IMG/VR virus record: IMGVR_UViG_3300027816_000051
Location: 186,001-250,000 of that record
Reading direction: 5' to 3' (one strand)
Length of the DNA: 64,000 nucleotides
Shown here: positions 24,134 through 42,395 of the stretch, in pieces
Numbering within the stretch: the stretch's first letter is position 1
How the letters are laid out: each line of letters starts with the position of its first letter
Notes under the pieces: model-generated
Told to the model about the DNA's origin: nothing
Databases searched by the model: none
What the model saw: the letters and a program-made list of their open reading frames with translations, nothing else
Translations under genes and position numbers: made by a program

Positions 24134-24164
24134 AAAAAACCCCCAAGTGTCATACAAGGGGGTT
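24134..24164. terminator. Hairpin at the convergence of the + and - gene blocks
   Basis: A-tract then aaccccc...gggggtt stem. Confidence 0.55.
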
Positions 24165-24184
24165 AATGTATATACGTATATATG

Positions 24185-24976
24185 TCATACACGTCTCGTG
24201 TCGTCAATAAAAATTCTTACGTTGTGTTTCTCCCTGAACTTTTTTTCTAACTTATCAATAATATTATCTTGTAAGTTATAGGGGAAATCGGGACTACCTT
24301 TTTCGATACCATCTATGGTTTTAAATTTTGAATCAATGAACGGAATTAAATCTTTTTCATTTTTTATATCTTTTTTCCCGCGTACCACAACTCTAATAAC
24401 TGGGTTGTCTACGAGTTCATACTCATGGTCATCTATCTTTCCTTTTTTATATACGGTGTAATACACCGTCGCTCTCTTTATTAAAATTTTTATCCACTCA
24501 TCCATTTGGTCAAAAAACTTAGGTAATACATCTTGAGGTAATACAAGGGAATATTGGCCAGACAAAATGTACTGTATTGTTGGATTATCATACCTGAGGT
24601 GATTGGTATAATTTCTGTCAAACGATTCTTCTAATAAATCAATAATTAAAGGTCCGTTAATAAGGTGAAGTGACCTTATACTTAACTTGAACGGAAATTC
24701 ACCGAACCCAATCTCTTGAATTTTTCTGCCAACCAAAATGTAGATGTCATTAATCATCTCAGGATAAACCCTGTTAACATCAACAAATAGTTTCAATAGA
24801 CATTCACTTATAAAAGGGACACCATCTATTGTTCCTTGGGTTGGGTCTTCAGCTACAACATATTTTATTGTAATGGTCCCATCGGTCAGTCCTTTAAGTG
24901 AGTCACCTATTTGTGGTAAAGCGTCGTGAAACTTTTGGACATCATCACCTTCTAAAGTTTCTGTTAGTTTAATCAT
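24185..24976 (-). CDS. Hypothetical protein (probable start MIKLTE)
   Basis: TATTTATA on the sense strand just upstream of ATG 24976. Confidence 0.6.
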   Translation of the reverse strand: MIKLTETLEGDDVQKFHDALPQIGDSLKGLTDGTITIKYVVAEDPTQGTIDGVPFISECLLKLFVDVNRVYPEMINDIYILVGRKIQEIGFGEFPFKLSIRSLHLINGPLIIDLLEESFDRNYTNHLRYDNPTIQYILSGQYSLVLPQDVLPKFFDQMDEWIKILIKRATVYYTVYKKGKIDDHEYELVDNPVIRVVVRGKKDIKNEKDLIPFIDSKFKTIDGIEKGSPDFPYNLQDNIIDKLEKKFREKHNVRIFIDDTRRV

Positions 24977-25274
24977 CTCATTTACTTTACATATAAATAC
25001 CATTCCCCCGCCAAACTAAATCGACCTCCTCAGGTCCCTGAACTAACAAGTGTTAGTTAGTTTGTGCCAAACAAAATCGGTACCGTCGGACGATTCTGAG
25101 GATTCTGATTCCGCCAAACTAAATCGGTGGATTTATTGTTACAACATCAATTGTCTAAACAACCTTTCCGCCAAACTAAATTGACCATCTCAGGTCCCGT
25201 CGTCAGGATTCTCATTAAAAAAAAAATCCCGTGACGTTAATCACAGGATTTGGTTAAGAGACTTGAGTCGTCTA

Positions 25275-25544
25275 TTACATATTACTCAAGATACTCTTAC
25301 GGAACTCGAAAGCTTTCTTCTTGGAGGAGAAGTTCTGAGAGTAACGGGTTCCGTTAACGCTAGCACGTACACGGTAAGAGAAACCATCATAGTAGATGTG
25401 GTGTGAAACAGGTACGTAAGTACTTACGGTTGTTTTCATAGCCGGAGCTGCTACTGCTTTCTTCCCACCCTTTTTGGGGGCTGGAGCTGGTTTCGCCGCT
25501 GGTTTGCTGGCGGGTTTTTTAGTTGTGGACTTCTTTGTTGCCAT
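25275..25544 (-). CDS. Small basic protein: K/A/P-rich histone-like tail plus AP2-like DNA-binding domain
   Basis: MATKKSTTKKPASKPAAKPAPAPKK then HIYYDGFSYRVRASVNGTRYSQNFSSKKKAFEFR (three beta-strands plus helix pattern). Confidence 0.55.
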   Translation of the reverse strand: MATKKSTTKKPASKPAAKPAPAPKKGGKKAVAAPAMKTTVSTYVPVSHHIYYDGFSYRVRASVNGTRYSQNFSSKKKAFEFRKSILSNM

Positions 25545-25633
25545 AATATATTGATTTTGATATATAAAATATACACAAGAAAATCCTAAAAACCAAATCC
25601 TATAAAAAAATCTTTCAAAGAACTAATGCCAAA

Positions 25634-25954
25634 CTAAATCCACAGTATGATTCCCTCCTCAGGGTTATCAGGGTACCGTGACTCTTCTAAACATACACCA
25701 CATGTGGATGGTAATAATTGCTGCTTACCTTTTATTCCATCTACCTGAAATTGCGATAGAGGTGCTGGTATACTGAATCCACATATGTGACACTCTAACC
25801 TATATACGTTTAACTCACCCTTCCAATATAAATCAGTCAAGTTGAATTTCTTTCCCATCACTACGTTGTCATTAACGTCGGTAATGGTGTCTTCTATTAT
25901 TTCACCTGTGGTAGGGTCCGTGAAGTATACCTTGTCCCTGATGAAGAGTTTCAT
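25634..25954 (-). CDS. Hypothetical zinc-ribbon protein
   Basis: CHICG and CGVC; TAG stop lies inside a GCCAAACTAAAT motif. Confidence 0.6.
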   Translation of the reverse strand: MKLFIRDKVYFTDPTTGEIIEDTITDVNDNVVMGKKFNLTDLYWKGELNVYRLECHICGFSIPAPLSQFQVDGIKGKQQLLPSTCGVCLEESRYPDNPEEGIILWI

Positions 25955-27507: not shown

Positions 27508-27598
27508 ACACCTATTGATTTTTAATGTTCTATATTCAAAATTAATACATTTACTAGAATATTCCAAATTTTTCTAGAATATTTTTGCCAATCTAAAT

Positions 27599-27898
27599 TC
27601 AGTACATCTCCTCCTTCAGTTGCTTTGCTTTCTCAAAGTGTTTCTTGATTTGGTTTGCAAAACTCACCAAACGAGCTTTGGTCTTTGCGTATGCGTAGAA
27701 CTGACAATACTCACTGTCAAAATCGATTCCACTACAATTGATGTTTCTCTTGACACAGTCCTCGAAGTCATAGGCAGAGTCGTAGTCGTGACCAATTGCT
27801 TCTTTTTTAGGGAAACCAGTAAGTGTCCACTGTGCTCCATCCCAATCACCTTTGTAAATTGAGAGTCCAATACCTGTTGAAATTGTTTCTGTTTTCAT
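27599..27898 (-). CDS. Hypothetical protein
   Basis: Operon member; stop abuts the motif at 27587. Confidence 0.55.
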   Translation of the reverse strand: MKTETISTGIGLSIYKGDWDGAQWTLTGFPKKEAIGHDYDSAYDFEDCVKRNINCSGIDFDSEYCQFYAYAKTKARLVSFANQIKKHFEKAKQLKEEMY

Positions 27899-27902
27899 AC
27901 CT

Positions 27903-28382
27903 CTACTTTTTAAATGTTGATTTGAATACTCGGATGTTTTCCTCAATCTCGAGGTCCATAGCCTGAGCTAACTTCATCTTGGCTTTGGTCATGAACTCCT
28001 TGTCGCCAGACAAAATCTCCAAATCCTCCTCAGGGTGAAACTCAATCTTGTCGACAATAACACGGACATCTTTTGACTTCTTATCCTTACGGTAGAAAGG
28101 AGTCCTTGCGTAGATGTACTCACGAACTTGAGTCAACTTGATATCACTGAGGTCCTCACGAATTCTCATTTGGATTATAATCTCCTCGAGTGATGCTAGT
28201 TTTTCGAATGTTAATTTACTCTCAGTGATTAAGTTCTTATATAAACCAGTGAGCTCTTTAAGCTCCTTAGAATATTTCTTACCATCACCGTGGTTGATGA
28301 ATTGGTCATATGAACTCAGTTCACTCTTTGACCCTACGATGTCAATGAAGACACCCTCGATTGTTTTATTTACTCGTCCCAT
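27903..28382 (-). CDS. Hypothetical protein
   Basis: 159-aa ORF in an operon. Confidence 0.6.
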   Translation of the reverse strand: MGRVNKTIEGVFIDIVGSKSELSSYDQFINHGDGKKYSKELKELTGLYKNLITESKLTFEKLASLEEIIIQMRIREDLSDIKLTQVREYIYARTPFYRKDKKSKDVRVIVDKIEFHPEEDLEILSGDKEFMTKAKMKLAQAMDLEIEENIRVFKSTFKK

Positions 28383-28654
28383 AATCTTTAAAAGAAGTTT
28401 AATACAGATTTTAACATGCCAAACAAAATTCGGGGTTCGGCTGTCCCGTCGGAAAATTTTACTTCAGAGTTTTCCATTTCTCTTTTCATTTGAATTGCTT
28501 CATCAACTTTAATCCGTTGCTCGATGGTTCTTGCGTGGTATTTGGATGAAACAATGACATTCTCTTGAGTTCTCAATGCGTCTACCCATTCTTGGTAGGT
28601 TAATTCTTCTTGAGGTTCTGCTGTCGATAATATTTTCAAATCTTCCATATGAAT

Positions 28655-29269
28655 TTATTTTACTTTTTCCTTTAGTTCTTCTTCGTATATTCTACGGATT
28701 TCTTTTGCGTCTTCCGTATCCACATAAGGGAATTGTGCAACGAAGTCATCAACACTAGTTTCGTTATCGATTGCATATTCCATCTCATTTTGGAAAAGGG
28801 ATTCCCAAAAGTATTCTTCGTCAAAACGATAGTTACCTTCGAGATAACCATAATCATCCTCAACCACTCCGTTTTGATTAATGGTTGTTTTGCCACAGAA
28901 ATCACTTCCACCCTCCGAGTAGAACAACTCCACATCCACACCATACATCTTGTGTAATACAACACCAAAGTTTATTGGTGGTGACCACGCCGTATCAGGT
29001 GACATATAGATAACATCCTTCTCAAAAGTGAAGTTGCAGTCGGCGTATGACACATCCCATTTGGTACCATACCAACTGGTGTTTGCATTATACCATCCAC
29101 CTTGTTCGTATTCTTCTTTACTAATTTCAGGTTCACGACCGATTAAGGACTCAAACACGATACACTTTTCAGGTTCGGACTTTGGAACATCATTAAGGAT
29201 ACGAGTGAGCAAACCAATCTGCTCTTCAGTACCTGTTATTGTTATTGAGTTTTGACACCAGTTCGGCAT
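28655..29269 (-). CDS. DUF1281/YubB ferredoxin-like family protein
   Basis: MPNWCQN, WYGTKWD, DTAWSPP. Confidence 0.7.
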   Translation of the reverse strand: MPNWCQNSITITGTEEQIGLLTRILNDVPKSEPEKCIVFESLIGREPEISKEEYEQGGWYNANTSWYGTKWDVSYADCNFTFEKDVIYMSPDTAWSPPINFGVVLHKMYGVDVELFYSEGGSDFCGKTTINQNGVVEDDYGYLEGNYRFDEEYFWESLFQNEMEYAIDNETSVDDFVAQFPYVDTEDAKEIRRIYEEELKEKVK

Positions 29270-29352
29270 AATCTATCTATTTTAAGCTGTTCATTAATAC
29301 AAAGGTATAAAGAGGATACCATTTTACCAAACGATATCCTCTTTTTATTTTT

Positions 29353-29898
29353 TTACCAGGATGATTGGTAGTAGAAATCTCCTTCCTTTTCCTCTAATAA
29401 GGGAGTGATTTGTTTGATGGTATCTTCTAAACCTTTTAGATACCACTCATCATATTCAGTTCCCCCGAAAAAGAAACCTGCTTGGGTTGGTAGTAGTTCT
29501 TCCGCAAGTTCGGTGTCGGTGTAGACATCGATGTCCTCATACAATTCCTTACCACCTTGCCAACCAACTTTCACCTGAACCTTCTTCGTCGGAGAATTTT
29601 TCAGGGTTGCTCTAACTTTCCCACAGGTATCCACCAACTCTTTGAGTTTTTCGCGGTCTACATAATACTCACCACAATCGTCCTCACCGTCCTGTACATT
29701 GTTTACAAACCATGCGTGGATGTGGTTGTCCTTTCTCCAATACGCCACCTGTTCCTCGATGGATGAAATTCTGTCGGGTTGAATTTCCTTAACTACTTTC
29801 CCACCCTTCTTAACTGTCACCTTGTGAAGTTGTTCGGGTTCCATATGTGACCAATTTTTCACATAGGTTTTCTTCTTGAGATACATGTCTAATCCCAT
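29353..29898 (-). CDS. Conserved phage hypothetical protein (MGLDMY...YWRK family)
   Basis: MGLDMYL, YWRKDNHIHAWF, GFFFGG, YYQSSW. Confidence 0.7.
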   Translation of the reverse strand: MGLDMYLKKKTYVKNWSHMEPEQLHKVTVKKGGKVVKEIQPDRISSIEEQVAYWRKDNHIHAWFVNNVQDGEDDCGEYYVDREKLKELVDTCGKVRATLKNSPTKKVQVKVGWQGGKELYEDIDVYTDTELAEELLPTQAGFFFGGTEYDEWYLKGLEDTIKQITPLLEEKEGDFYYQSSW

Positions 29899-29902
29899 TG
29901 TA

Positions 29903-30205
29903 TTATTGATTTAAGATGTTAAACAATTTTGTACCAAGACCAAATAACTTTTCGGCCTTATCTTCTCTTTTTCCTTCACTACACACGTAGATTGACTTAT
30001 CAGGTAGAACACCCAAATCCAACATTCCAAATGTGTGTTCCCATTTACCATTGATGAATTGTTCACCTGTAAACCTTTCTTGTGCGTTGTACGCTTCGTA
30101 GGTCATTTTCAATTTGACATTATTCTCATTTTGAATAATTCTCATCTCATATGACTTATCTCTCAAGTGAGATGATACCGAGTGGATTACTTTTTCTTTT
30201 TTCAT
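29903..30205 (-). CDS. Hypothetical protein (probably leaderless)
   Basis: ATG lies 4 nt after TATCTTTG. Confidence 0.6.
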   Translation of the reverse strand: MKKEKVIHSVSSHLRDKSYEMRIIQNENNVKLKMTYEAYNAQERFTGEQFINGKWEHTFGMLDLGVLPDKSIYVCSEGKREDKAEKLFGLGTKLFNILNQ

Positions 30206-30265
30206 AATACAAAGATATAACAATTTTTCTTTTATACCAAATTTATTTTCAACTTTGTTGCCAAA

Positions 30266-30577
30266 CTAAATGTCCTCGACGGTAAAGTCATCCGACTCAA
30301 GGATGTCTATGATGTGTGCGAGTTCATATATGTCCAATTCAACTAACGAGAGTTCTATACTATCACCAAAACTTTCCGACATCACAGTACCATCAGGTAA
30401 TATTCCATACGCCGCGTATTGAACTCTACCATCATCTTCGTACATACCTTCGGTAACCCAAACTCCAAACACATTTCTAAATGTGATTTGTTGGTTCTCA
30501 CCAATAATGGTCGAACATTTGTTTTTAATTTTTTTGATTATTTCCTCTTGTAGGTCTTGAATTTTTTTCTTGTACAT
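30266..30577 (-). CDS. Hypothetical protein
   Basis: Own promoter; TAG stop inside the motif. Confidence 0.65.
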   Translation of the reverse strand: MYKKKIQDLQEEIIKKIKNKCSTIIGENQQITFRNVFGVWVTEGMYEDDGRVQYAAYGILPDGTVMSESFGDSIELSLVELDIYELAHIIDILESDDFTVEDI

Positions 30578-30699
30578 AATAAAATGTTTTAGTAATACAA
30601 AGATATAACAATTTTTCTTTTATACCAAATTTATTTTCAACTTTGTTGCCAACCTAAATCAATGTCCATCCCATAATATATGTGTACGAGGTTTTTAAT

Positions 30700-30725
30700 A
30701 AAAAACCCCACATTTCTGTGGGGTT
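30700..30725 (-). terminator. Intrinsic terminator (same hairpin reused near 34213, 40725, 41816)
   Basis: aaaaaaccccacatttctgtggggtt. Confidence 0.85.
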
Positions 30726-30740
30726 CTCTCCTTAAACCAA

Positions 30741-31331
30741 TCAATCATAAGTAATCCTCGCGTATTTTACTGTGACCCAGTTGTCCTTTACAACAATCTT
30801 ACCCATGTCCTCACCATCCTCGCCTTTCCAATAAACCTCACCATTTAATTTCACACCCCACTTCTCAAAGAAATGATTGATGATATATTTCAACCACTCA
30901 ACGTAGTTGTAAAACTTCTCACCACCATCCCATATTAGATGAGTTCCATTTTCATCCGTAGTCCACTGACACCATAAACCAGGTTGACATTTACCCTCTC
31001 GTGTTCTCAAATCATTTTGTGTCCACCTTTCGTTGTAGTTAGTTGTTAGAAAATCTAGTTGACCTGGAGGTGTATTGTAATCGACAATACTATCATCCTT
31101 GTCTTGACCTGCGAACCCATTACCACCAACAAAGTATTCACCATCGTTTCCGTAGGTTTCTTCTTTTGGTAGAAAAGGGTTTCCGTGTTCACCCTTAAAT
31201 AACTCATAGAGTTTCTCAACATTTCGTTTCATTCTACGAGTGTTGTTGAACTTGGTGATGTAATTCTTTTCATCACTAGTAAGTGGACGACTGAATTCAA
31301 ATCCACCTTCGAAATCGGTTGTGTATCCCAT
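30741..31331 (-). CDS. Conserved phage hypothetical protein (MGYTTDF family)
   Basis: QPGLWCQW, WDGGEKFYNYVEWL, WKGED. Confidence 0.7.
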   Translation of the reverse strand: MGYTTDFEGGFEFSRPLTSDEKNYITKFNNTRRMKRNVEKLYELFKGEHGNPFLPKEETYGNDGEYFVGGNGFAGQDKDDSIVDYNTPPGQLDFLTTNYNERWTQNDLRTREGKCQPGLWCQWTTDENGTHLIWDGGEKFYNYVEWLKYIINHFFEKWGVKLNGEVYWKGEDGEDMGKIVVKDNWVTVKYARITYD

Positions 31332-31410
31332 ACTTTTTTAATTTAATTGTATTACAAAGATATAACAATTTTTCTTTTATACCAAATTTTTTTTCAACTT
31401 TGTCGCCAAA

Positions 31411-31887
31411 CTAAATCCCCCCTGTGAATATGGGGTTTGGTCTGAACTCCAATTTGTACTTTGGGTTGTAACTACCACCCGAACAATTGCTACATGAATA
31501 AGACCTACTTCTTAAACGATGGGCTTTGGATACCTTACCACAACCAACACATGTTGCAATATATTTTGCTTCGGGTGTTTCAACTACTTTACTACTATAA
31601 CAACGATGTCCATCACAACCTATTTCAATCGCTTTCGACCTCCATACATGGTTATGTTTTTGACCAGGACAAAGTGCGTGTGCAATCTCATGTAGAATAG
31701 TATTCTTTACATGACTTTCATCATTAAGTAATGTCAATACTTTGGATAGTGTAATTTGTTTAGGTCTGTATTTACAACACCCAAACCTACTTTTTGCATT
31801 GTCATACGCAAATGTCCACCCCTTAACATCTAACTTGTGTTTGTGAATTAACTTCTCTGCTAACCGTTGTGCTTTAATTAAGTCCAT
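31411..31887 (-). CDS. SprT-like zinc metalloprotease
   Basis: FGCC, ILHEIAHAL, HNHVW, C-terminal CxxC pairs. Confidence 0.85.
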   Translation of the reverse strand: MDLIKAQRLAEKLIHKHKLDVKGWTFAYDNAKSRFGCCKYRPKQITLSKVLTLLNDESHVKNTILHEIAHALCPGQKHNHVWRSKAIEIGCDGHRCYSSKVVETPEAKYIATCVGCGKVSKAHRLRSRSYSCSNCSGGSYNPKYKLEFRPNPIFTGGI

Positions 31888-31908
31888 GTTGTTTTATTTT
31901 AGGCCAAA

Positions 31909-32298
31909 CTAAATTTCACCTTCACCTGTCGTGATGTACACTCCGTAATCGATGGTGTGCAATTGTGGTACTCCATCATTGTCCATGATGTGACCATCGA
32001 ATAACCAGTTGGGTTGAACTCGTGGATTGTATCGAACCCTACGACTTTCATCCTTGTATGGTTGACCTGTGTAAATCTTGATGTCCTTACAAAGTATCCA
32101 CGCACATACTGTTTTATTACCACCATCGAAAATCTTCTGTGCTGTTTTCCTGTGGTTCTTAAATGTGCAACCTGTCATGACCAACTGATTATCTGTTGGA
32201 CTGTAATACAATACACTACCATCAGGGTGTTGTACTTTCCACTTCATGTAGTTCTTACCTCTACCGAGATTGAACCTTACTTTAATACTTTTACTCAT
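31909..32298 (-). CDS. Hypothetical protein
   Basis: Own promoter; KTVCAW, YNP; TAG stop inside the motif. Confidence 0.65.
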   Translation of the reverse strand: MSKSIKVRFNLGRGKNYMKWKVQHPDGSVLYYSPTDNQLVMTGCTFKNHRKTAQKIFDGGNKTVCAWILCKDIKIYTGQPYKDESRRVRYNPRVQPNWLFDGHIMDNDGVPQLHTIDYGVYITTGEGEI

Positions 32299-32316
32299 CT
32301 TGATTGGTTTATAATA

Positions 32317-32348
32317 CAAATATAATACTAATTCTTTTATATTCCAAA
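32317..32348 (-). promoter_or_regulatory. Bacteroidota promoter, representative of about 28 similar ones between 27.5 and 49.6 kb
   Basis: TTTG-N20-TATATTTG on the - strand; similar elements near 30210, 30598, 31355, 33016, 34062, 37123, 40360, 42755, 44112, 46549, 46856. Confidence 0.88.
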
Positions 32349-32392
32349 TGTTTTTTTGCCAAACAAAAATCCCCCTGTGACGGGGGACCTTT

Positions 32393-32995
32393 TTATTCTT
32401 TCAAATCAAAAATCAATTCGGTGTAATTCATCATCCCATTGGTTACGAGTGGACTATCTTTTTCTACCGAGATAACATCTCTTGCCCACGAACCAACAAT
32501 CTCATTTTCATCATCACCTCTAAAATCTCCCCCACCCATTCCGTTACCTTCACTAGTTAATAGTGGTAAAGGGTGAATTTTTACACCATCCCATCCTTGA
32601 ATTTCGGGAACTTTGTTTTTATCCACGAACATTTTTTTGGTGTGGTTTACAATGTAGGGGTATTCATCCGTTGATGACACTTTGGGTTTGATTTGGTTTT
32701 CATCATTACAAAGTGAATACAAATTTGCATCGTACTCCTTCCCTTCCGAAATGACTTTTACACCTGGTTCTTCTCCTGCGTAATCACCCGCCCACACTAC
32801 ACGACTTTTGTAATGTTCACCTCTACGGGTTAATTGTTTTTCAAAAGTTGAAACGAAGTTGTTCCCTTGATAGGAATGCTCCATCAGTTTGAGTCCGTTG
32901 TCGTACTCGTGTGAATACATCCACGCTTTAACTGTTTCGTGTTCACCCTCTTTTGGGGTGTTACCTAAAATGATTGGTTTATAATATTGTCCCAT
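32393..32995 (-). CDS. Conserved phage hypothetical protein (MGQYY family)
   Basis: GLKLMEHS, WAGDYA, IHPLPLLT..GNG.GGGD, GSWARD. Confidence 0.7.
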   Translation of the reverse strand: MGQYYKPIILGNTPKEGEHETVKAWMYSHEYDNGLKLMEHSYQGNNFVSTFEKQLTRRGEHYKSRVVWAGDYAGEEPGVKVISEGKEYDANLYSLCNDENQIKPKVSSTDEYPYIVNHTKKMFVDKNKVPEIQGWDGVKIHPLPLLTSEGNGMGGGDFRGDDENEIVGSWARDVISVEKDSPLVTNGMMNYTELIFDLKE

Positions 32996-33270
32996 TGTTA
33001 TGTTGTTTTATGATACAAATATAATACTGTTATTATTATATTCCAAATAATTTTTTATCTTTTTTATTGTTTTCTTGCCAACCAAGTTTTTGGATTAACC
33101 AGGGTCACCAGCAAAATGACCAGTAAAACTGGCTGTTGCAACCAGTCTGAAGCCAGGTGATTTTGGTTGGCACAACTTAAAGTGTTGATTTTATTAGGAT
33201 TACAGAATGCCAAACAAAATTCCGATGACCAGCATCATGCGCGCAACATCTTCAAGCAATAAAAAACCCC

Positions 33271-34041
33271 TCATTGTGAGGGGTCTACTATAAACTTACT
33301 ATCTTTTTGAGGTCGTTTTCGTGTGACTTTATATTTTAATCCCACAATAATGTCGTTCTCATCTCGATATCTCATATCATATAAGTCACCATCGATAACT
33401 TTTCTACCCCAAAACTTTTTGGGTATTTCTTTTTTGAAAACAACGGCAACTCGTATACCATTGTTCAACATACTAATACAATCTGAAAAGTTTGTACCAC
33501 TAAATGAAAATGTTAAGTCGTAGTTCTTATACTTCTTAACTAACTCCATTCGTTTACCCACTTTGCTGTAGTCGTAAAACATAACATTAGGAAACAATTG
33601 CAAAATGTTTTTTCTTTTACCATCTATCTCCATATGAAAAGATTCGGGTGAAATGTCTGAAGTGTTATTTAAACGAACACTAAAGTGATAACCTTGTTTT
33701 TCTGCCTTCTTTTTTGCCGCCTCAATTTCTGCAACCATCCATTGCATGAAATACTGGCGATGTTCGAAAAACAATTTTGTTTTTTTAATTCTACTCTCAG
33801 TAATCATGTCATCTCTCATGTTCATTCGATTCATACCAGATTCGTTTAAACATAGTGCAGTACACTCCGCGTTTCTCATTGGGCAAACTTCGTAACCACT
33901 TAAGTCCGCGGGTGCGAGGTAAAGACTGTAGGTTAATTCATCATACTTGTACGCCTTAGCGTGTTTTGATGTCAGGTTAACTGAACCTAAATAATTGATT
34001 CCAGTTTCCTTTCTGGCTTGGGTTTTATTTCTGTACTCCAT
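33271..34041 (-). CDS. Gp88-like phage protein
   Basis: LYLAP, CP..C...CL, RLNNTSDI, FYDYSK, NYDLTFSFS, DGDLYDMR. Confidence 0.75.
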   Translation of the reverse strand: MEYRNKTQARKETGINYLGSVNLTSKHAKAYKYDELTYSLYLAPADLSGYEVCPMRNAECTALCLNESGMNRMNMRDDMITESRIKKTKLFFEHRQYFMQWMVAEIEAAKKKAEKQGYHFSVRLNNTSDISPESFHMEIDGKRKNILQLFPNVMFYDYSKVGKRMELVKKYKNYDLTFSFSGTNFSDCISMLNNGIRVAVVFKKEIPKKFWGRKVIDGDLYDMRYRDENDIIVGLKYKVTRKRPQKDSKFIVDPSQ

Positions 34042-34272
34042 ATAATATTGGTTTAACAATACAAATATAAAACGAATTCTTTTATATTCCAAATTTATTT
34101 TTATTTTTTTTCTTCAGGAGGGACCTGTTCTTCCCAGGGCGATATTGTTTGGCGGGCGCCAAACTAATTTAATAGACGAACTGTGCAGCTCCTCCGCACA
34201 CATTCGAGCAATAAAAAACCCCCACATTTCTGTGAGGGTTTTTCGAACCGAACATTAAATCAATATACTAAA

Positions 34273-34650
34273 CTAAAGAACCCCTTCTATTGAATGTCCC
34301 TTTTTGGTGAGGTTTTTACCTTTACGTTCATAGTTGTTGTAGCCAACCAAAAACAAATCGTCTTTGGTCCCTAACACCATCGAACCTTCAAGTTTCATTC
34401 CACCATAAGTTACTTTCAGCTTACGCATAAAATCATTGAAAGAACGCTCAAGCTGTACACCAATCTTATCGGTAGGAGGAACTGGTGCATTTTCAATGTG
34501 ATAACGAGTACCAACACGAGAAAATTTAATTCCCACCATTTCCTTTTTCTCAAAGTTTGGTAAACTCTCATTAAGGCATTCACGAATTTCGTGCAAAGAC
34601 TTCTTCAGAGAATTAGCCGTAGTCTTTCTTGGTTTTTTTATCATATTCAA
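34273..34650 (-). CDS. Basic hypothetical protein
   Basis: Cassette with own promoter and terminator. Confidence 0.55.
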   Translation of the reverse strand: MNMIKKPRKTTANSLKKSLHEIRECLNESLPNFEKKEMVGIKFSRVGTRYHIENAPVPPTDKIGVQLERSFNDFMRKLKVTYGGMKLEGSMVLGTKDDLFLVGYNNYERKGKNLTKKGHSIEGVL

Positions 34651-34899
34651 GTTTTTGAATTACAGTACAAAAGTAATAAGAATATTTTCGATAAACAACA
34701 AATATTTTCACTTTGTTCAACTTTTTTGTCAAAACCTTATACAAAAAGTGTCTTTTTTATTGGATTACAAACATTTGTGTGTTGAAAACTCCGCCAAACA
34801 AAATCTGGAGTCGTCTTCAGGATGTTACATCTTGTGAAATTTTGAGCAAAAAAAAGGGGTAACCTTTCGGTCACCCCAATCACTAACCCTAATCCAAAG

Positions 34900-35655
34900 T
34901 TAGAAACGAAGGTTCAACTTGTCCTCATTACGACGCTTGTAGTTGTAAATGTCTTCAATCATTTCCGCGTATGATTTTTTATCACCACACATATAGATTG
35001 AACTTGGACGAAGTTTTACTTTATGTAAAAATTCTTCAAACTTAAAATCGGGTTTCTTTTCCATAATGGTAAGAATAGTACGAACAAATACCGATTTGTT
35101 GTAACCCTTTTCAAAGTAAGGTTTCAGTTGGAGTAGGTTATTCGCCCATTCTTTGGCGGTTTCCATATTACCAACAACAAACTTACCATCCGCAAAATCT
35201 TGTTTGTCACAATGACGAGTACCAGAATTTTGTAGTAACATAATTCTTTCGGTCAAAGAAAACATCGGAAACTCTTTTGAAAAATCTTCCAAAGTTTTGT
35301 AAGATTTGTTTCCTTGTTCGGAAAAACCATGAATGTAATCTTTCTTACCCCACTCTTTCATGTTCTGGTTGAACTTACGTGCGGCTTCAAAGATACCTTT
35401 CGTGGTGTTGGGGATTGAGTTGTCTACAATAAAGTAGATACCTTTACCCGCTTCTTTTGCTGCGGTTAGTCGGTGTTGTCCGTCTACAACCACATACTGG
35501 GAGTTTACAATGATTGGAACGAGTTTTAATCCGTCCTTCTTCATCGAGTCTGTAATACGCTTAACGCGTGGAGAGTCTACCTCACGATTTACATTGTGAA
35601 GTTTGAACATACCCAAATTTTGGGTGAACTTTACTTGAACATTTTTTGTACTCAT
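34900..35655 (-). CDS. ParB-N/Srx domain protein
   Basis: NREVD, PIIVN, VVDGQHRLTA. Confidence 0.8.
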   Translation of the reverse strand: MSTKNVQVKFTQNLGMFKLHNVNREVDSPRVKRITDSMKKDGLKLVPIIVNSQYVVVDGQHRLTAAKEAGKGIYFIVDNSIPNTTKGIFEAARKFNQNMKEWGKKDYIHGFSEQGNKSYKTLEDFSKEFPMFSLTERIMLLQNSGTRHCDKQDFADGKFVVGNMETAKEWANNLLQLKPYFEKGYNKSVFVRTILTIMEKKPDFKFEEFLHKVKLRPSSIYMCGDKKSYAEMIEDIYNYKRRNEDKLNLRF

Positions 35656-36028
35656 TTTCGTTTCTAATTTTAGATTAAAGATTTAATGTGGGTACAAAGA
35701 TATAATAGTTTTTCTTTTTTTCCAAATTTTTTTTAAAGTTTTTTCAAAAAAGTTTTTCCACATACATCTTTGACTTTGTGTATGACAAACATACTAAAAC
35801 TTTTAAGGATATTCACCAAGAATACTAGTATTTCTTGCCAAACAAAATCGTCCAGCCGTCGTCCAGTTTTCCCCCTGGCGTATGTTAAAACGAAGATTTT
35901 CAGTATTTTAGAAACAAAAAAAGGGATTCCGAAGAACCCCTTTAGTGTGTCAAACCAAACACAAATTACAACTATGAAATGTAATCCAATAAAAAGTTAC
36001 ACATCATATTTTACATTGTCAAGTGTTT

Positions 36029-37102
36029 TTAGATTACAGGTAATACATCAAGTTCTTTACCTTTTTCTTGGTAGAACAAACTTCCACCATCATTTCCCTC
36101 ATCATCCATAGAAGGAATACATAGTGTTCCGTTGTCCAACTCAATACAAATTGGTCTCTTGTACCAACCCATAAGTTCCATTTCCTCATCGGTAAGATAA
36201 CGAACTGATTTGATAACTCGTCCCTTTAGGACTTTCTCACTTTGATTTACCCAATGGGTAGTTATTTCTTGATTTGTCATACGAATGGTTTTTTACAAAG
36301 GTATAAAGATTATTTCTTTTTACAAGTTATTTTTGCCAATCAATATTCACTGTTCACCATGTCTTCGGGTATCTTTCCAAAATATCTTGGGGATAGAGAA
36401 CACCATTACCATTAAGTAATACATCCTCCCACCAACGAATACCAATTTGTAAACGGGGTACTGCGAATTTTGGAATGTCATCTTGATGGACTCTAAAGAA
36501 CACATCGTTTCTTCCACCCGTTTCAGGTTCGCCTGGTGTAGGTAGTGTTTCTACTTCCTCACAATATTTTGCACGAACACCGAATTCTTGTTTTAACCAC
36601 TTTTCGAATTCCTTAATGTTGGACTTACCGATAAGAGTTGCGGGCCAAACACAAACTTGACTGAAATTTTTCATGTTACAAATAATTTAATTGACAATAA
36701 TCCTCAAGGTCAACTAATGGTATGCGACCATATTTTACGGAAGAATAATACCCTTGAGTTTCGTACCCTTTCTTCCATTGTTCGAACGCCTTACACGCCG
36801 CTCTGTGCGACTTGTAGTAAGGTACATCCCTTTCGAGTGTGAACCCATCAGGGGATAAAATTTGAATTTTCTGTGCCATATGATTAACGATAAAGAGTTA
36901 CATAGTCACCGAAATACTTTTCAATCACGCCAATCAAATTCTCATAATCCCCACTCATCATCTCCTCTTGAATTTTCTTGGAGTCCAAACCGAGTTGTTT
37001 CGCCCATTTTGAGGCGAGACCAATAAGAACGAACGCGTTCCCATCAGGTCCTGTGAGGTCAATCTCAATACCTCCTTGTTTTTCATCAATAGATTTTATC
37101 AT
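36029..37102 (-). other. Four small hypothetical genes (36029-36280, 36354-36674, 36676-36879, 36884-37102)
   Basis: Co-oriented ORFs with promoters; motifs SMDDEGNDGG, GGRND and LTGPDGNAF. Confidence 0.6.
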
Positions 37103-37244
37103 TGTCTTGTCGTTTTATAATACAAATATAAATCAGTAATTAATATAATCCAAATATTTTTTTATTTTTCTTGCCAATCTAATTTCCGTCCTGAACCGTG
37201 ACTCAGAGTCCTGAGAAATAAAAAAACCCCTTTCGGGGTTTCTC

Positions 37245-37652
37245 TTACGAGGTGTACTTGTTATAGAACACTTCCATTCGTTCCATTACCACATCTAAAC
37301 TCCAACCACTTGTGTCTTGGTCGTTCCAATGAAAGTAACCCATTTGAAATTTCTCAACACAATTAGGTATTGATTTATCGTGTACGAACTCGGGGCAACC
37401 ACCATCAACAAAATCATCTTGGTAGTTACCACGATACTCAATTACGATATCCTTACCATTGAACTTTTTGGTGTAAGTTACTTTTTGAGTATACTTTTTG
37501 GTTTGAACTTTACCCTTTCGTGTCCAACCATGTTCGGACATAAAAACATCCATTTGTTGGTTAACACTTTCTTTTATCTTAGAAAGTTCATTCTCTTTTT
37601 CCTCTTTTTGTTTTTTCAAGAAGGAATAATAATCTTTAATTGTCGTGTACAT
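37245..37652 (-). CDS. Hypothetical protein
   Basis: Cassette with promoter and terminator (aaacccc-tttc-ggggttt). Confidence 0.6.
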   Translation of the reverse strand: MYTTIKDYYSFLKKQKEEKENELSKIKESVNQQMDVFMSEHGWTRKGKVQTKKYTQKVTYTKKFNGKDIVIEYRGNYQDDFVDGGCPEFVHDKSIPNCVEKFQMGYFHWNDQDTSGWSLDVVMERMEVFYNKYTS

Positions 37653-37977
37653 ATGTTTATTAATTTAACACCACAAATATAAAAGTATATAGAATATAAT
37701 CCAATAATTTTTTTATTTTTTTTGCCAAACAATTTGGTGGATTCCAGGTCCCCGCAGCAGGAAACCAGTAAAACCAGAAGCAATGACTAGAAAAAACCAG
37801 TTGTGCAACAGCAGCAACCAGCCCTTGATTTTGGTTGGCGAACCCAAACCATTGATTTTATTGGGTTTACAGAATGCCAAACAAAATCACGAACAGCAGC
37901 GCAACCAGCAGCAACTTCGGAGCAATAAAAAACCCCCACCTTTTGAGTGAGGGTTTTAACCAATAAAAATGAAACAA

Positions 37978-38667
37978 CTAACTCTCTGCGACCAATAGTT
38001 TTCGGTATTCTTTTTCGGTCAAGTGTCTAACCGAACCACTTTCACACTTCTTTTTCTTCTTAATAAGAACACAATCACCTTGCCGAACAATTTTCTCAAT
38101 TCCACCTTCTTTAATGTCTGTTTGAATTGTCCACGCGATTGCTTGAATAGGGGTAATCTTTTCACCAAAGTTCTCACTACTACTCAACCATTTGTCTTTG
38201 TTGTTAGTACGATAAACACTTTGTGCGTCCACCCAAATAAAATACTCCCTATCAGTTGAGGTGTCCTTACACTTTACAAAGTGAACATTATCTGGTCTAC
38301 GCCAACCAAATTCTGCACCTTCACCCCAAACATTTCCTTTTACTTCATAAAGTTCGTAGGTGTCCTCAAAGTTTTTCTTAATGAGTTCACCATTCTCACC
38401 AACCCAAAATGTTTCTTTTGAAATCGTTTCGGACTTAATAAGTGTGGGGTTCACTTCTTTGTAAATGTTTTCCAAACCCAAACAACCTACGGCGATACGC
38501 CTCTGTTCAATGTTTTGAATTTCGGTTGTAATTTCTTTGAAAGTAATAGGAACAATATCTTCCCAAATATCTTCCAAACCATTAAAGGGTGTATTACGAT
38601 ATTTTGTTTTTAATAAACGACAACCAATGTTGTAGTCAAAACGAGTGTTTTCAATTATGATTTTCAT
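37978..38667 (-). CDS. DUF6745-like protein
   Basis: NIEQRR, YELY, VKCKDTSTDREY, AIAWT. Confidence 0.5.
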   Translation of the reverse strand: MKIIIENTRFDYNIGCRLLKTKYRNTPFNGLEDIWEDIVPITFKEITTEIQNIEQRRIAVGCLGLENIYKEVNPTLIKSETISKETFWVGENGELIKKNFEDTYELYEVKGNVWGEGAEFGWRRPDNVHFVKCKDTSTDREYFIWVDAQSVYRTNNKDKWLSSSENFGEKITPIQAIAWTIQTDIKEGGIEKIVRQGDCVLIKKKKKCESGSVRHLTEKEYRKLLVAES

Positions 38668-38687
38668 TTCTTTTACTTTTTAATTGT

Positions 38688-39341
38688 TTACATATCACTT
38701 TCAGTCAATACCAAAAATTGTCTTGTTAGTGAAACGAATAATGTGTTATCTACAATTTTAGGTAATACATCACTATCCACTTCTTCTGTGTTGAATTGAA
38801 ACCAATCCTCTTGTTCGCCGTCTGCGTTTTCAAATTCGTGGTTCTCAACAACATCAGTAATCTTTTCCAATAATGTATCAGAAATCTGTTCTTCCTCATC
38901 ATTGAGAATACAATCACCTTTGTAGTTAATTGAACTTCCGTCTTGACTGCCAACCAAATTAAGGACTTTGGTTCTAATAAACTCAACCTCTTTTTCTGTG
39001 AGTTCAACAACAACTTCTTCTGTAAAACTCTCTGACCATTCCGCCTGTGCAGATTTGTAATACGAGAAAGTGGGGTTTTCCTCATCATCTTCATCAAGTG
39101 TAATCTCAACACTTCCAAATTCACCAATGTAGTGTCCGTCAGAGTTCACATAAAATTCTACTCTACGGAAAACATCATCATCAAAGAAACTATCAAGTTC
39201 ACCACTCTCAACATCTTTGTTTTCTGAATTGTAAAAATTAAAGTGATAATCATTCATACTATCACCACCACAACTAAATTCCATAGTTGCGCTTGTAATA
39301 CCTAACTCTTTCCAGAGTGCGATTGCTTCATTAGTTTGCAT
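38688..39341 (-). CDS. Acidic protein, DUF6878-like
   Basis: GITSATMEFSCGGDS N-terminus. Confidence 0.5.
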   Translation of the reverse strand: MQTNEAIALWKELGITSATMEFSCGGDSMNDYHFNFYNSENKDVESGELDSFFDDDVFRRVEFYVNSDGHYIGEFGSVEITLDEDDEENPTFSYYKSAQAEWSESFTEEVVVELTEKEVEFIRTKVLNLVGSQDGSSINYKGDCILNDEEEQISDTLLEKITDVVENHEFENADGEQEDWFQFNTEEVDSDVLPKIVDNTLFVSLTRQFLVLTESDM

Positions 39342-39735
39342 ATTCGTGGATTTTTTGGTTTAATTGTTTAACTACTTCGTACGCTTCGGGGTTGTCTAAA
39401 TCTTTTACCCCATTACACATCCAGGGTTGAACCTCTAAATGTTTAAGGTAATCTTGTGGGGTTGGAACGAACTTCATTCTAAAATCTTCTGCGATATGTA
39501 ACATCGCAATATCAACAACATCAACTGACTTACCATCACTATTAGTAATGTTGTAACCGAAGATTTTTGGAATGATAGTGTATGCGAACCAAGTGTTGTG
39601 GGTGAGTAACCGAGAACTATTATTGTTCATTGTCGCTTTCGGACTATCAATAAGTTCGTGGATAGGTAAATAATCTTCTACCTTACCACCCCAACGCTTG
39701 ACGCTGCTCTTTGAGTGAATTAGTGGGTTCGCCAT
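39331..39735 (-). CDS. DUF6915-like protein
   Basis: MANPLIHSKSSVKRWGGKVEDYLPIH..DS, HIAED, VPTPQD. Confidence 0.65.
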   Translation of the reverse strand: MANPLIHSKSSVKRWGGKVEDYLPIHELIDSPKATMNNNSSRLLTHNTWFAYTIIPKIFGYNITNSDGKSVDVVDIAMLHIAEDFRMKFVPTPQDYLKHLEVQPWMCNGVKDLDNPEAYEVVKQLNQKIHEYAN

Positions 39736-39737
39736 AG

Positions 39738-40016
39738 TTAATCCCAAATTTGAGTGATAGTACCTTCAAACGGATTGTACTCAACTTGTTTTCCCATAAC
39801 CCAATCACCTTGCTCAACTTTGAGTGGTTTGTGTTCGTTTGAGAAACTTCCATCGGGTTGTTCGTGTCTTAATACACTATCCTTTCTAACTTCAACTTCT
39901 GCGAAATCTGTTTGTGTTTCATCAACAATGAAATCACCATACAGAGTGTGCTGGTTAACACCCTCACCCTTTAAGAGTGTGTGTTTTTTCTTCGGAGTTA
40001 CTTTCTTGTTTTTCAT
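39738..40016 (-). CDS. Small His-containing conserved protein
   Basis: GEGVNQH, LRHE, EH, QVEYNP. Confidence 0.55.
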   Translation of the reverse strand: MKNKKVTPKKKHTLLKGEGVNQHTLYGDFIVDETQTDFAEVEVRKDSVLRHEQPDGSFSNEHKPLKVEQGDWVMGKQVEYNPFEGTITQIWD

Positions 40017-40776
40017 TTTTAGATTGTTTTATGGTACAAATATAAATCTATTTTTTGTATAAGTGAATTTTTTTTTTATTTTTTTCGCCAAACAAAAATC
40101 ACCCGTGAAGGTGATTTCGTCATTCGTTTCGTACAATATCTAATAGGTCATTCACAATTTCTTTTTTGGTTAATGAAAGAAGTTGATTACCTCTGAACGA
40201 CAACAACTTAAAGGTATTCATTCCTTTAATACCTTTTTCACCCTCTACATAGTAATCCATTTTCCACTTACCCAAATACTTAACATTCCCTATGTGTTTT
40301 ACATAGTAGACATTACCGATAGTTAGTTTTTCTAAAACCATATAAATTAATTTAGAACACAAATATAAATCTATATTTTGTATAATCCAAATTTATTTTT
40401 ATATTTCTTGCCAAACAAAAGTTATCCTGTGCTGCATCATCACCATCTTGGATACTTATTATTATGATAGAAGGGATACTTTATACATTAGGAGTTGAGT
40501 TCGTATTAGTCATTATATTGTTTTGTTATGAGTTAAGAAGACAACTAAAAGAAGATTATCAAGAGAAACCATTTAGATTCTGGGAAGATACATGAACATC
40601 TCCTGGTTGCGCGCAGCCCTCGATTTTGGTTGGCTCGAACCCAAAGTATTGATTTTATTGGGTTTAGAGTTTGCCAAACAATTTTCACTGTTTGCGCGTA
40701 GCTCACCATCAACTTTGGAGCAATAAAAAACCCCACATTTCTGTGGGGTTCTTATTAATTGAGTACCTAACCAATC

Positions 40777-41631: not shown

Positions 41632-42035
41632 ATGGATGTTTTTTAATTTGATACAAATGTAATACACTTTTCATTATAATCCAAATAAATCTTTATTTTT
41701 TTTTTCTGACCCCAGAATTCACCGTACCATCTCAGAAATTGGTTGGCATCTGTCATACACCCGCCAAACTAAATTGAACACGGGATTTGCCGGCGACGAA
41801 TTTTTTTAGCAAACAAAAAACCCCCACATTTCTGTGAGGGTTCCTTAACCAAATAAAACTAATCTATGAACGACAAATCAAGTGTATTACACTTTAACCA
41901 AATATAGGAATTAAAACAAACATTGTCAATAGGAAAAACATAAGTATTACAATGCCACCCAAAATTCCATCCCAAAATTCCTTTCGGTCTTCTTGGTAAA
42001 CTTCTTTGAAAGTTGAAAACATTTCCTTTAACATA

Positions 42036-42395
42036 TCAATAATTGTTTTGATTATCGTAGTTGTCTCGGTAAACTCTTTTACGAGGTTGGTTGGTTCGTT
42101 GACCATTCCAATGGCGGTCTCCATTACCACCATTTTCGTAGTATGAGTTATTAATCATTTCATCAACCGATGGAACTTCAAAGTCCATATCACAACTTCC
42201 ATTCATCATCTTCCACTGAATTTCATAAATGGTTTTAATGTCTTCTTCAACATTGACATATGTACCATCTATGTATTCAATCTTCGTTGCTATCTTGTCG
42301 TTTCTTTTATCCAAGATACTAAAAATGTTTTTGACATTTTGTAGATTGACAAGTGTTGGGGTTCCTTTACCTTGATAAGTGAGTTTAATTAACAT
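42036..42395 (-). CDS. Hypothetical protein
   Basis: Own promoter; LVN..TKIEY..VNVEE pattern. Confidence 0.55.
   Translation of the reverse strand: MLIKLTYQGKGTPTLVNLQNVKNIFSILDKRNDKIATKIEYIDGTYVNVEEDIKTIYEIQWKMMNGSCDMDFEVPSVDEMINNSYYENGGNGDRHWNGQRTNQPRKRVYRDNYDNQNNY

What the first reader, a model, noticed from the sequence alone, without database searches (positions are those of the whole stretch)
25275..25544. Candidate cognate binder: histone-like tail fused to an AP2-like domain at the edge of the motif domain
Seen: an 89-aa protein with a K/A/P-rich tail and a C-terminal HIYY..SYRVRASVNG.RYSQNF...KKAFEFR segment. Its gene has one motif upstream (25628) and four just downstream (25010-25182). 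Established: AP2/ERF and related three-stranded beta-sheet domains bind short non-palindromic sites, GCC-containing in plant ERFs. Inference: best in-window candidate for reading GCCAA sites, possibly autoregulated, with the tail compacting DNA. The ParB-N protein (34900-35655) or a host factor are alternatives.
Basis: inference. Interest (0 to 1): 0.72.

Follow-up and report, generated by a model that had tools for sequence, protein, structure and literature searches.

The report
Small AP2-fold phage protein, not motif reader
The 89-residue gene is real, well transcribed in lake samples and folds like an AP2/integrase-arm DNA-binding domain, but comparison with related giant phages argues that it does not read the GCCAAAC motif.

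Summary
Window 25275-25544 (-) is a genuine 89-aa gene: K/A/P-rich disordered head (residues 1-37, net charge +11) plus a conserved 50-residue domain. One motif copy lies upstream and four downstream (three exact, one with a mismatch).

The fold claim holds. The core model (pLDDT 92.5) is a three/four-stranded sheet plus C-terminal helix. Its best matches are AP2 domains, integrase arm-type domains and the AP2 modules of phage HNH endonucleases. No Pfam family is matched.

The cognate-binder claim is not supported.
- The window belongs to a 288-kb bS21-type freshwater Bacteroidota jumbo phage, and the motif marks nearly every intergenic region of a 25-kb block with host-type promoters. Motifs next to this gene are therefore not a special association.
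- In relatives the motif is lineage-specific (GTTTGGC, GTCTGGC, TACTGGG, TACTGGA, GACTGGC, GTTTCGC and others), while the protein's sheet stays the same. Proteins 86% identical accompany motifs differing at 5 of 7 bases.
- The K/A/P tail is missing in most homologues.

Lake metatranscriptome contigs cover the gene from its own conserved promoter to its own terminator, at the highest depth in 6 kb.

Best reading: an abundant phage nucleic-acid-binding protein of low or conserved specificity. One speculative target is the conserved GTAT(G/T)ACA element.

The parts
25275..25544 (-). CDS of the 89-aa protein (stop codon included)
   Evidence: ORF list. 120 homologues. Single copy in the genome. 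Third-codon-position-only differences in a related strain's RNA contig.
25434..25544 (-). Residues 1-37: K/A/P-rich, predicted disordered N-terminal tail
   Evidence: pLDDT about 46-52. 11 K, 10 A, 6 P, net +11. Variable in length or absent in homologues.
25278..25433 (-). Residues 38-89: conserved AP2/integrase-arm-type fold (strands 44-47, 50-52, 57-63, 66-72; helix 75-87)
   Evidence: Core model pLDDT 92.5. Fold matches. Invariant residues.
25560..25597 (-). The gene's own promoter: TTTG (-33-like, 25594-25597), 20 nt, then TATATTTTATATAT (25560-25573), about 15 nt before the ATG
   Evidence: Read from the sequence. The same arrangement is conserved upstream of the homologous gene in most of the 25 relatives inspected. 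The metatranscriptome contig begins at 25573.
25217..25251 (-). Intrinsic terminator of the gene: 12-pair stem 25251-25224 followed by a run of 10 T
   Evidence: Terminator scan. RNA contig X1 ends at 25217, the last base of the T run. An equivalent hairpin and T run follows the gene in relatives.
25628..25639 (+). Motif copy upstream of the gene. In gene sense it reads ATTTAGTTTGGC, and its TAG is the stop codon of the upstream ORF 25634-25954
25010..25181 (+). Four tandem motif copies (25010, 25066 with one mismatch, 25113, 25170), lying between the gene's terminator and the next gene (24185-25003)
   Evidence: Relatives carry their own lineage's motif, or GTATGACA arrays, in the same position.

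Best explanation
The gene encodes a small, very basic nucleic-acid-binding protein conserved across bS21-type freshwater Bacteroidota jumbo phages and more distant relatives. Its 50-residue core has the AP2 / integrase arm-type fold, closest to the AP2 modules of phage HNH homing endonucleases. It presents invariant Arg58 and Arg60, and basic or polar residues of the next strand, on the sheet face not packed against the helix (inferred from the alternation of residues). A basic N-terminal arm, expanded in this lineage into a 37-residue K/A/P-rich tail, would add non-specific affinity for the DNA backbone (inferred).

The gene is an autonomous unit with a strongly conserved host-type promoter and a strong terminator. 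In lake metatranscriptomes it is the best-covered stretch of its neighbourhood. This fits an abundant architectural or globally acting DNA-binding protein made from the host-RNA-polymerase-dependent block.

It is not the protein that gives the GCCAAAC(T/A)AAAT motif its specificity. That motif is a lineage-specific upstream element of the block's promoters and changes between relatives while this protein's sheet does not. If the protein has a preferred site, that site should be as conserved as the protein.
For: Fold. Language-model neighbours carry Integrase_DNA, Arm-DNA-bind_4 and Integrase_N_phage.

Conservation: invariant SYRVR core in 120 + 56 homologues. Single copy.

Genome context:
- The genome encodes bS21, which places it in the clade of PMC9723584.
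- Perfect host-type -7 boxes (TAnnTTTG) precede 27 of 53 genes at 210-240 kb and 0-1 gene per 10 kb in most of the rest.
- The motif occurs in nearly every intergenic region of the block, with a -7 box 41-43 nt downstream in 10 of 40 copies and 31-33 nt downstream in 4.

No covariation:
- The sheet segment from DG to NF is identical or differs at one or two loop or strand-end residues in six loci.
- Their dominant motifs are TACTGGG (L029, 20 sense/13 antisense), GTCTGGC (L031, 10/2), TACTGGA (L026, 21/6), GACTGGC (L023, 10/2), GTTTCGC (L039, 6/7) and GTTTGGC (L042, 11/3).
- The L029 and L039 proteins are 51/59 identical.
- Each lineage's variant sits upstream of the same conserved promoter of the homologous gene, so the variants correspond in position.

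Expression: RNA contigs span 25217-25573 at depth 10.8 (X1) and 25329-25515 at depth 15.8 (X10), against 2-4 for the other pieces in 6 kb. Promoter and terminator are conserved in relatives.
Against: - No binding assay or complex model exists (one search was not folded), so DNA binding itself is inferred from fold and charge.
- All fold scores are moderate (Z up to 6, Foldseek E 0.006-0.4), as expected for 50 residues but not decisive.
- No sequence-profile match to AP2 or to arm-domain families.
- Most motif variants keep a TGG core, so recognition of only that invariant part by the invariant arginines is not excluded.
- Metatranscriptome contigs carry assembler depth, have no strand, and may include DNA carry-over.
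- The motif comparison covers only +/-10 kb around the gene in each relative.
Confidence: 0.6

Rival explanations
1. One reading: the protein is the sequence-specific reader of the GCCAAAC(T/A)AAAT sites, regulates the block and itself, and compacts DNA with its tail.
For: - AP2-like fold.
- It is the only protein of the block with a recognisable DNA-binding fold among the 24 proteins of the block scanned against Pfam.
- Motif copies flank the gene.
- Most lineage variants keep TGG, and the protein keeps R58 and R60.
Against: - Motifs flank almost every gene of the block.
- Near-identical proteins go with motifs differing at up to 5 of 7 bases, including one without TGG (GTTTCGC in L039).
- Several gene-bearing loci (L028, L043, L050, L052, L059) show none of the variants within +/-10 kb.
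- The tail is absent in most homologues.
Confidence: 0.12
2. The protein binds the deeply conserved GTAT(G/T)ACA element rather than the lineage motif, in the manner of integrase arm domains on direct-repeat arm sites.
For: - The element is as conserved as the protein. It is enriched in sense orientation in nearly all of the 33 non-redundant related loci counted.
- CGTATGACA is a top 8-mer in the L080/L081 loci, whose proteins are 34% identical, and a GTATGACA copy lies just beyond the gene or its terminator in L080-L084, whose proteins are 31-36% identical.
- Seven tandem copies follow the gene in L049.
- In the window it forms direct repeats 21 nt apart between inverted motif pairs.
- GTATTACA is absent from the genome outside 205-240 kb (0 against about 23 expected) but has 16 copies inside.
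- It is clustered in the same block in two relatives.
Against: - The evidence is co-occurrence only. Many other conserved phage proteins could read the element.
- Part of the sense-strand excess lies in coding sequence.
- There is no binding test.
Confidence: 0.18
3. It is an RNA-binding (dsRBD-like) or ribosome-associated protein, in keeping with the clade's interference with translation through bS21.
For: - Sub-threshold dsrm hits in the window protein (E 0.66) and in 7 of 61 family members, best E 0.023.
- dsRBD structures at Z 2-2.8.
- AP2-like mitoribosomal proteins of T. gondii among the best matches.
- Two cluster members are labelled 'predicted RNA-binding protein' by JGI.
- Inverted motif pairs could form RNA hairpins.
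Against: - The model lacks the first helix of a dsRBD.
- AP2 and integrase domains score clearly higher than dsRBDs.
- The dsrm hits are far below the Pfam cut-off (11 bits against 23).
Confidence: 0.07
4. It acts by binding host RNA polymerase or another protein, like small phage regulators such as Xp10 P7 or E. coli CedA, not primarily by site-specific DNA recognition.
For: - Weak structural resemblance to CedA (Z 3.0-3.7) and to Xp10 P7 (Z 2.2).
- The gene lies in an early-type block and is well transcribed.
Against: These matches rank below the AP2 and integrase domains. The invariant exposed arginines and the basic arm point to nucleic acid.
Confidence: 0.05

Closest known systems
AP2-type DNA-binding modules of phage HNH homing endonucleases (HNH_3 + AP2 architecture, e.g. 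T5-like F-Tfl enzymes)
   Same: Best structural matches in the viral library: probability 1.0, TM 0.65-0.77, rmsd 0.9-2.0 A, 26-32% identity over about 42 residues. Same sheet-plus-helix module in a phage setting.
   Different: No nuclease domain. It is a standalone 89-aa protein, single copy. No Pfam AP2 match. It is conserved as a core gene at a fixed position rather than scattered like homing endonuclease genes.
Arm-type DNA-binding domains of tyrosine integrases (lambda Int-N, Tn916 Int-N, HPI/P4-like integrases; Pfam Integrase_DNA, Arm-DNA-bind_4)
   Same: Same fold (3jtz Z 4.7, 1bb8 Z 4.1, 3rmp Z 4.4). Nearest named language-model clusters. AlphaFold DB integrase N-termini at TM 0.6-0.73.
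   Different: Not attached to a recombinase. The clade is reported to lack integrases (PMC9723584). No sequence-profile match.
Plant and apicomplexan AP2/ERF domains (AtERF1 GCC-box binding domain 2gcc, PfSIP2 6sy0, TEM1 7et4)
   Same: Fold: Z 4.3-6.0, rmsd 2.2-3.5 A over 45-51 residues. Arginines on the exposed sheet face.
   Different: No detectable sequence homology. No evidence for GCC-type recognition. Sequence identity 6-24%.
Abundant phage-encoded histone-like proteins, e.g. SPO1 TF1 (from my own knowledge, not tested here)
   Same: Small, basic and highly expressed phage DNA-binding protein that could act globally on phage or host DNA. This is a functional analogy only.
   Different: TF1 is an HU-fold dimer, whereas this protein has an AP2-like fold with a disordered Lys/Ala/Pro tail. 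No functional data exist here.

Membership tests
AP2/ERF domain (Pfam PF00847) | Significant match to the family's sequence profile | tested here: not met
   No AP2 hit at E up to 10 for the protein. None among the 25 most-matched families listed for the 61 family members scanned at E up to 1. PF00847 finds nothing in the genome at E up to 1.
AP2/ERF domain (Pfam PF00847) | Three-stranded antiparallel sheet packed against one C-terminal helix | tested here: met
   Model secondary structure. AP2 structures are the top matches (6sy0 Z 6.0, 2gcc Z 4.8, 7et4 Z 4.3-5.2). AlphaFold DB 'AP2/ERF domain-containing' hits at probability 0.9-1.0.
AP2/ERF domain (Pfam PF00847) | Sequence-specific DNA binding through Arg and aromatic residues of the sheet | not testable with these tools
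   Invariant R58, R60 and Y51 are present, but complex prediction does not fold protein with DNA.
Integrase arm-type DNA-binding domain (PF02920 / PF14657) | Significant match to the family's sequence profile | tested here: not met
   No Pfam hit. No PDB sequence hit with either family profile at E up to 10. Only language-model similarity of 0.83-0.87, below the tool's own 0.9 lead threshold.
Integrase arm-type DNA-binding domain (PF02920 / PF14657) | N-terminal module of a tyrosine recombinase | tested here: not met
   Standalone 89-aa ORF with its own promoter and terminator. Single copy. The clade is reported without integrase or resolvase (PMC9723584).
Cognate transcription factor of the GCCAAAC(T/A)AAAT motif | Recognition surface changes when the motif changes between relatives (covariation), or motif and gene are associated exclusively | tested here: not met
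   The same sheet sequence goes with six different motif variants. Proteins 86% identical go with motifs differing at 5 of 7 bases. Motifs flank almost all genes of the block.
Histone H1-like / lysine-rich 'histone-like' tail proteins | Lys/Ala/Pro-rich low-complexity tail | tested here: met
   Residues 1-37: 11 K, 10 A, 6 P, no acidic residue. Predicted disordered.
Histone H1-like / lysine-rich 'histone-like' tail proteins | The tail is a conserved, defining part of the family | tested here: not met
   Most homologues are 56-72 aa with only a short basic Thr/Lys/Arg arm. The long tail is confined to the window's close relatives.
dsRBD (Pfam PF00035) | Profile match above cut-off and alpha-beta-beta-beta-alpha topology | tested here: not met
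   11 bits against a cut-off of 23. No N-terminal helix in the model. dsRBD structures reach only Z 2-2.8.

The most novel reading that the evidence does not exclude
That signal is potent enough to be purged from the rest of the 288-kb genome yet concentrated in the host-polymerase-dependent block. On this reading the protein is an abundant AP2-fold 'phage histone' that nucleates on these sites to switch the whole early block on or off. The lineage-specific TGG-type motif would be read by a different, still unidentified factor.
Probability: 0.15. Interest if true: 0.6.

Novelty: new member of a known kind. Interest (0 to 1): 0.35.

Why it matters
The result gives a fold and a likely activity to a protein family that is unannotated in every source consulted here. 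The family is conserved at a fixed position in an abundant group of freshwater Bacteroidota jumbo phages and is well transcribed in nature.

It also removes the most obvious candidate for reading the block's promoter-upstream motif. Because that motif changes from lineage to lineage, its reader must be a faster-evolving phage or host factor.

The comparison exposes two cis-elements that deserve study in their own right: the lineage-specific TGG-type motif placed 42 nt before host-type -7 boxes, and the conserved, genome-purged GTAT(G/T)ACA element.

Tried and rejected
Searches that gave nothing:
- Pfam and PHROGs on the protein: only noise-level hits.
- Pfam on 61 family members: no shared family.
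- PDB sequence search with two family profiles: no hit.
- GenBank phage collection by DNA and by protein: no match.
- The supplement of PMC9723584 gave no expression table for this family.
- ESM Atlas on the downstream 272-aa protein: no lead, best score 0.58.

Steps that failed or fell short:
- Complex prediction with residues 30-89 and a 30-bp motif duplex was counted but not folded. It is no evidence either way.
- With the neighbouring bPH_2 protein it returned only close relatives that all carry the gene, so 'motif-rich relatives lacking the gene' could not be tested.

Readings of the motif considered and dropped:
- U-tract of intrinsic terminators. The motif often overlaps the upstream stop codon and elsewhere follows a separate canonical terminator.
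- Sigma-54 promoter. The GG-N10-GC rule is not met (reading).
- Promoter of a phage RNA polymerase. No single- or multi-subunit polymerase was detected, although the control for PF00940 did not ring.

Other: an apparent 792-nt 'skip' over the downstream gene in run X9 is most simply a divergent gene in a related strain, not a deletion.

Full report
**What is there.** Window 25275-25544 (- strand) is an ATG-started ORF of 89 residues. Residues 1-37 are Lys/Ala/Pro-rich (11 K, 10 A, 6 P, no acidic residue, net +11) and the whole protein has pI 10.6. The exact motif GCCAAACTAAAT occurs at 25628 (upstream of the gene) and at 25170, 25113 and 25010. A one-mismatch copy lies at 25066 (downstream). 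The motif is far above chance: 47 matches with up to 2 mismatches against 9.1 +/- 3.0 in shuffles. In the whole 288,260-bp record all exact copies lie at 211-229 kb on one strand.

**The gene is real and conserved.**
- A search of 5.8 billion proteins gave 120 homologues of 55-133 aa, all unnamed and without Pfam domains. An exhaustive HMMER scan of cluster representatives added more distant ones down to about 31% identity.
- In the 40-sequence alignment of closer homologues the invariant positions are Y43, Y51, G54, S56, Y57, R58, V59, R60, G65, K75, A78 and R82. In the wider 52-sequence alignment only Y51, G54, R58 and R60 stay invariant.
- The long K/A/P tail is found only in the window's close relatives. 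Most members are 56-72 aa with a short basic Thr/Lys/Arg arm.
- The gene is single copy in the genome.
- All five differences between the window and a related strain's metatranscriptome contig inside the CDS fall on third codon positions (25311, 25326, 25356, 25359, 25389). That is the signature of purifying selection.

**Fold.**
- With the family alignment, AlphaFold2 gives a disordered head and a confident core: strands 44-47, 50-52, 57-63 and 66-72, and a helix 75-87. The core alone reaches pLDDT 92.5 and pTM 0.71.
- A VIA-align search of 48,161 PDB chains that does not depend on Foldseek ranks these at the top: the P. falciparum SIP2 AP2 domain (Z 6.0), AP2-like Toxoplasma mitoribosomal proteins (Z 5.0-5.7), the AtERF1 GCC-box domain (Z 4.8, 2.2 A over 45 residues), the HPI integrase arm domain (Z 4.7), TEM1 and WRINKLED1 AP2 domains (Z 4.2-4.3) and Tn916 Int-N (Z 4.1). 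One search gives the same picture.
- AlphaFold DB clusters give integrase N-termini and 'AP2/ERF domain-containing' proteins at probability 0.96-1.0, TM 0.5-0.84 and rmsd 1.0-2.8 A.
- In the viral library the best matches are the AP2 modules of phage HNH homing endonucleases: probability 1.0, rmsd 0.9-2.0 A, 26-32% identity over about 42 residues.
- ESM Atlas neighbours beyond the protein's own family carry Integrase_DNA, Arm-DNA-bind_4 and Integrase_N_phage.
- dsRBDs score only Z 2-2.8, and the dsrm Pfam hits are far below threshold.
- The scores are moderate in absolute terms, as is unavoidable for 50 residues, and no sequence profile links the family to AP2. I therefore accept the fold but not Pfam membership.

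**Genomic setting.**
- The record is an IMG/VR virus genome, 92% complete. It encodes ribosomal protein bS21. This places it among the bS21-encoding jumbo phages of freshwater Bacteroidetes described by Chen et al. 2022 (PMC9723584), which were reported to lack integrases.
- It has two sigma-70-family genes and no detectable RNA polymerase.
- Perfect Bacteroidetes-type -7 boxes (TAnnTTTG) precede 27 of 53 genes at 210-240 kb and almost none elsewhere. The unidirectional block of small genes at window 24-50 kb is therefore the host-polymerase-dependent, early-type region (inference).
- The 89-aa gene is the second-to-last gene of this block. Its homologues hold the same end-of-block position in a 74%-identical relative and in contigs whose proteins are only 31-36% identical.

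**What the motif is.**
- In gene sense it reads (A/T)(A/T)TT(A/T)G(T/G/A)TTGGC. It occurs in nearly every intergenic region between 25.0 and 49.7 kb, singly or as inverted pairs.
- Of 40 sense copies, 10 have a perfect -7 box 41-43 nt downstream (8 at exactly 42), and 4 have one at 31-33 nt. This puts the motif at roughly -45 to -66 of host-type promoters.
- It often overlaps the stop codon of the preceding gene (ATTTAG) or follows a separate canonical terminator, so it is not a terminator U-tract.
- Because almost every gene of the block has such a copy, the copies next to the 89-aa gene are no evidence of a special relationship or of autoregulation.

**The decisive comparison.**
- Fifty-nine related loci were fetched from IMG/VR, mostly from 200-335-kb contigs.
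- Close relatives share the GTTTGGC-type motif. More distant ones have a different dominant repeated word in the same architecture: TACTGGG (L029, L032, L053), TACTGGA (L026), GTCTGGC (L031), GACTGGC (L023), GTTTCGC (L039), CTTTGGC (L049), TCCTGGC (L062) and ATGTTTGGCC (L040, L055).
- The variants correspond in position. Each lineage's word lies 44-72 nt upstream of the conserved -7-like box of the homologous gene, and one to three copies follow the gene's terminator.
- The protein's sheet does not follow these changes. The segment from DG to NF is identical in L029, L031 and L032. It differs by only one or two loop or strand-end residues in L026, L039, L042 and L023.
- The whole L029 and L039 proteins are 51/59 identical, although their motifs differ at 5 of 7 positions. 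The L039 word even lacks the TGG shared by the others.
- Five loci with the gene show none of the variants within +/-10 kb.
- AP2 and integrase arm domains read bases with the sheet (established knowledge of 1GCC and lambda Int-N). This protein therefore cannot be what distinguishes one lineage's motif from another's. At most it could touch the shared TGG.

**Expression.**
- Four freshwater RNA libraries hold pieces of the 6-kb stretch.
- In run X1 one contig spans 25217-25573 at depth 10.8, against 2.2-3.8 for its other four pieces. In X10 a contig spans 25329-25515 at depth 15.8 against 3.9. A related strain in X9 gives 25243-25548.
- The X1 contig ends exactly at the last T of the terminator run (stem 25251-25224). 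It begins at the promoter's TATATTTT box.
- That promoter is TTTG, 20 nt, then TATATTTTATAT(A)AAC, about 12-15 nt before the ATG. Together with a hairpin and T-run terminator, it is conserved upstream and downstream of the gene in most of the 25 relatives inspected.
- The gene is thus a monocistronic, well-transcribed unit. This suits an abundant protein better than a scarce dedicated regulator. The caveats are that contigs carry assembler depth, have no strand, and may include DNA.

**Best explanation and rivals.**
- Best explanation (0.6): an abundant, basic nucleic-acid-binding protein with an AP2/integrase-arm fold. It is derived from, or related to, homing-endonuclease DNA-binding modules. 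It has low or clade-conserved specificity, and its tail is a lineage-specific booster of non-specific affinity.
- A more interesting variant (about 0.15-0.18) is that it reads GTAT(G/T)ACA. This element is enriched in nearly all related loci. A GTATGACA copy lies just beyond the homologous gene or its terminator even in the most distant relatives. It forms seven tandem copies after the gene in L049. In the window it occurs as direct repeats 21 nt apart between inverted motif pairs. It is absent from the genome outside 205-240 kb (0 against about 23 expected) while present 16 times inside. It clusters in the same block of two relatives. This is co-occurrence only.
- RNA binding (0.07) and RNA-polymerase binding (0.05) remain possible but are less well supported.

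**Novelty and score.** The family is new to the databases consulted but belongs to a well-known fold class, and small standalone AP2-like proteins in phages are not surprising. The attractive part of the finding, a motif and its reader found together, does not survive comparison. I rate it a new member of a known kind, with interest 0.35. The cis-elements uncovered along the way are the more intriguing leads.

Noticed in passing
window 41758, 44238-44273, 46017-46052, 46951-46987, 47651-47687, 24155-24190; whole genome: GTAT(G/T)ACA element. GTATTACA has 0 copies outside genome 205-240 kb (about 23 expected) and 16 inside (about 3 expected). GTATTAC is among the most depleted 7-mers outside the block (13 against 69). 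The element lies as direct repeats 21 nt apart between inverted motif pairs. It is conserved in all relatives and clustered in the same block of two other complete genomes.
   Followed up: partly
L023-L062 (related IMG/VR loci): The promoter-upstream motif is lineage-specific among related jumbo phages (GTTTGGC, GTCTGGC, TACTGGG, TACTGGA, GACTGGC, GTTTCGC, CTTTGGC, TCCTGGC). Each variant is nearly exclusive to its lineage and often forms palindromes with 4-nt or about 14-50-nt spacers. Its reader must evolve fast.
   Followed up: partly
window 27544-46601 (14 promoters): Fixed phasing of the motif to the Bacteroidetes -7 box TAnnTTTG: 42 nt in 8 cases, 41-43 nt in 10, 31-33 nt in 4. The two classes are one helical turn apart.
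   Followed up: partly
whole genome; window 24976-25021: TATTTAT lies within 60 nt upstream of 57 of 266 genes outside the early-type block. It is a candidate middle or late promoter, possibly for the phage sigma factors at genome 142.7 kb and 40.9 kb. The 272-aa gene downstream of the target has this box right after the last motif copy, in the window and in relatives.
   Followed up: no
genome 28129-28287 (outside the window): The phage encodes ribosomal protein bS21. This ties the genome to the bS21 phage clade of freshwater Bacteroidetes (PMC9723584).
   Followed up: yes
L084:14910-20237: A distant relative's contig carrying the homologous gene also encodes Cas3-like, Cas6 and Cas7fv-like proteins. 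This is a phage-borne type I-F-variant CRISPR-Cas module.
   Followed up: no
window 48113-48268: Three 72-nt tandem repeats, each ending in an antisense motif copy (AATTAGATTGGC), overlapping a short 65-aa ORF.
   Followed up: no
window 25023-25036 and upstream of many motif copies: Short G+C-rich hairpins (for example GACCTGAGGAGGTC) directly precede many motif copies. Their sequences vary, so the stem rather than the sequence may matter.
   Followed up: no
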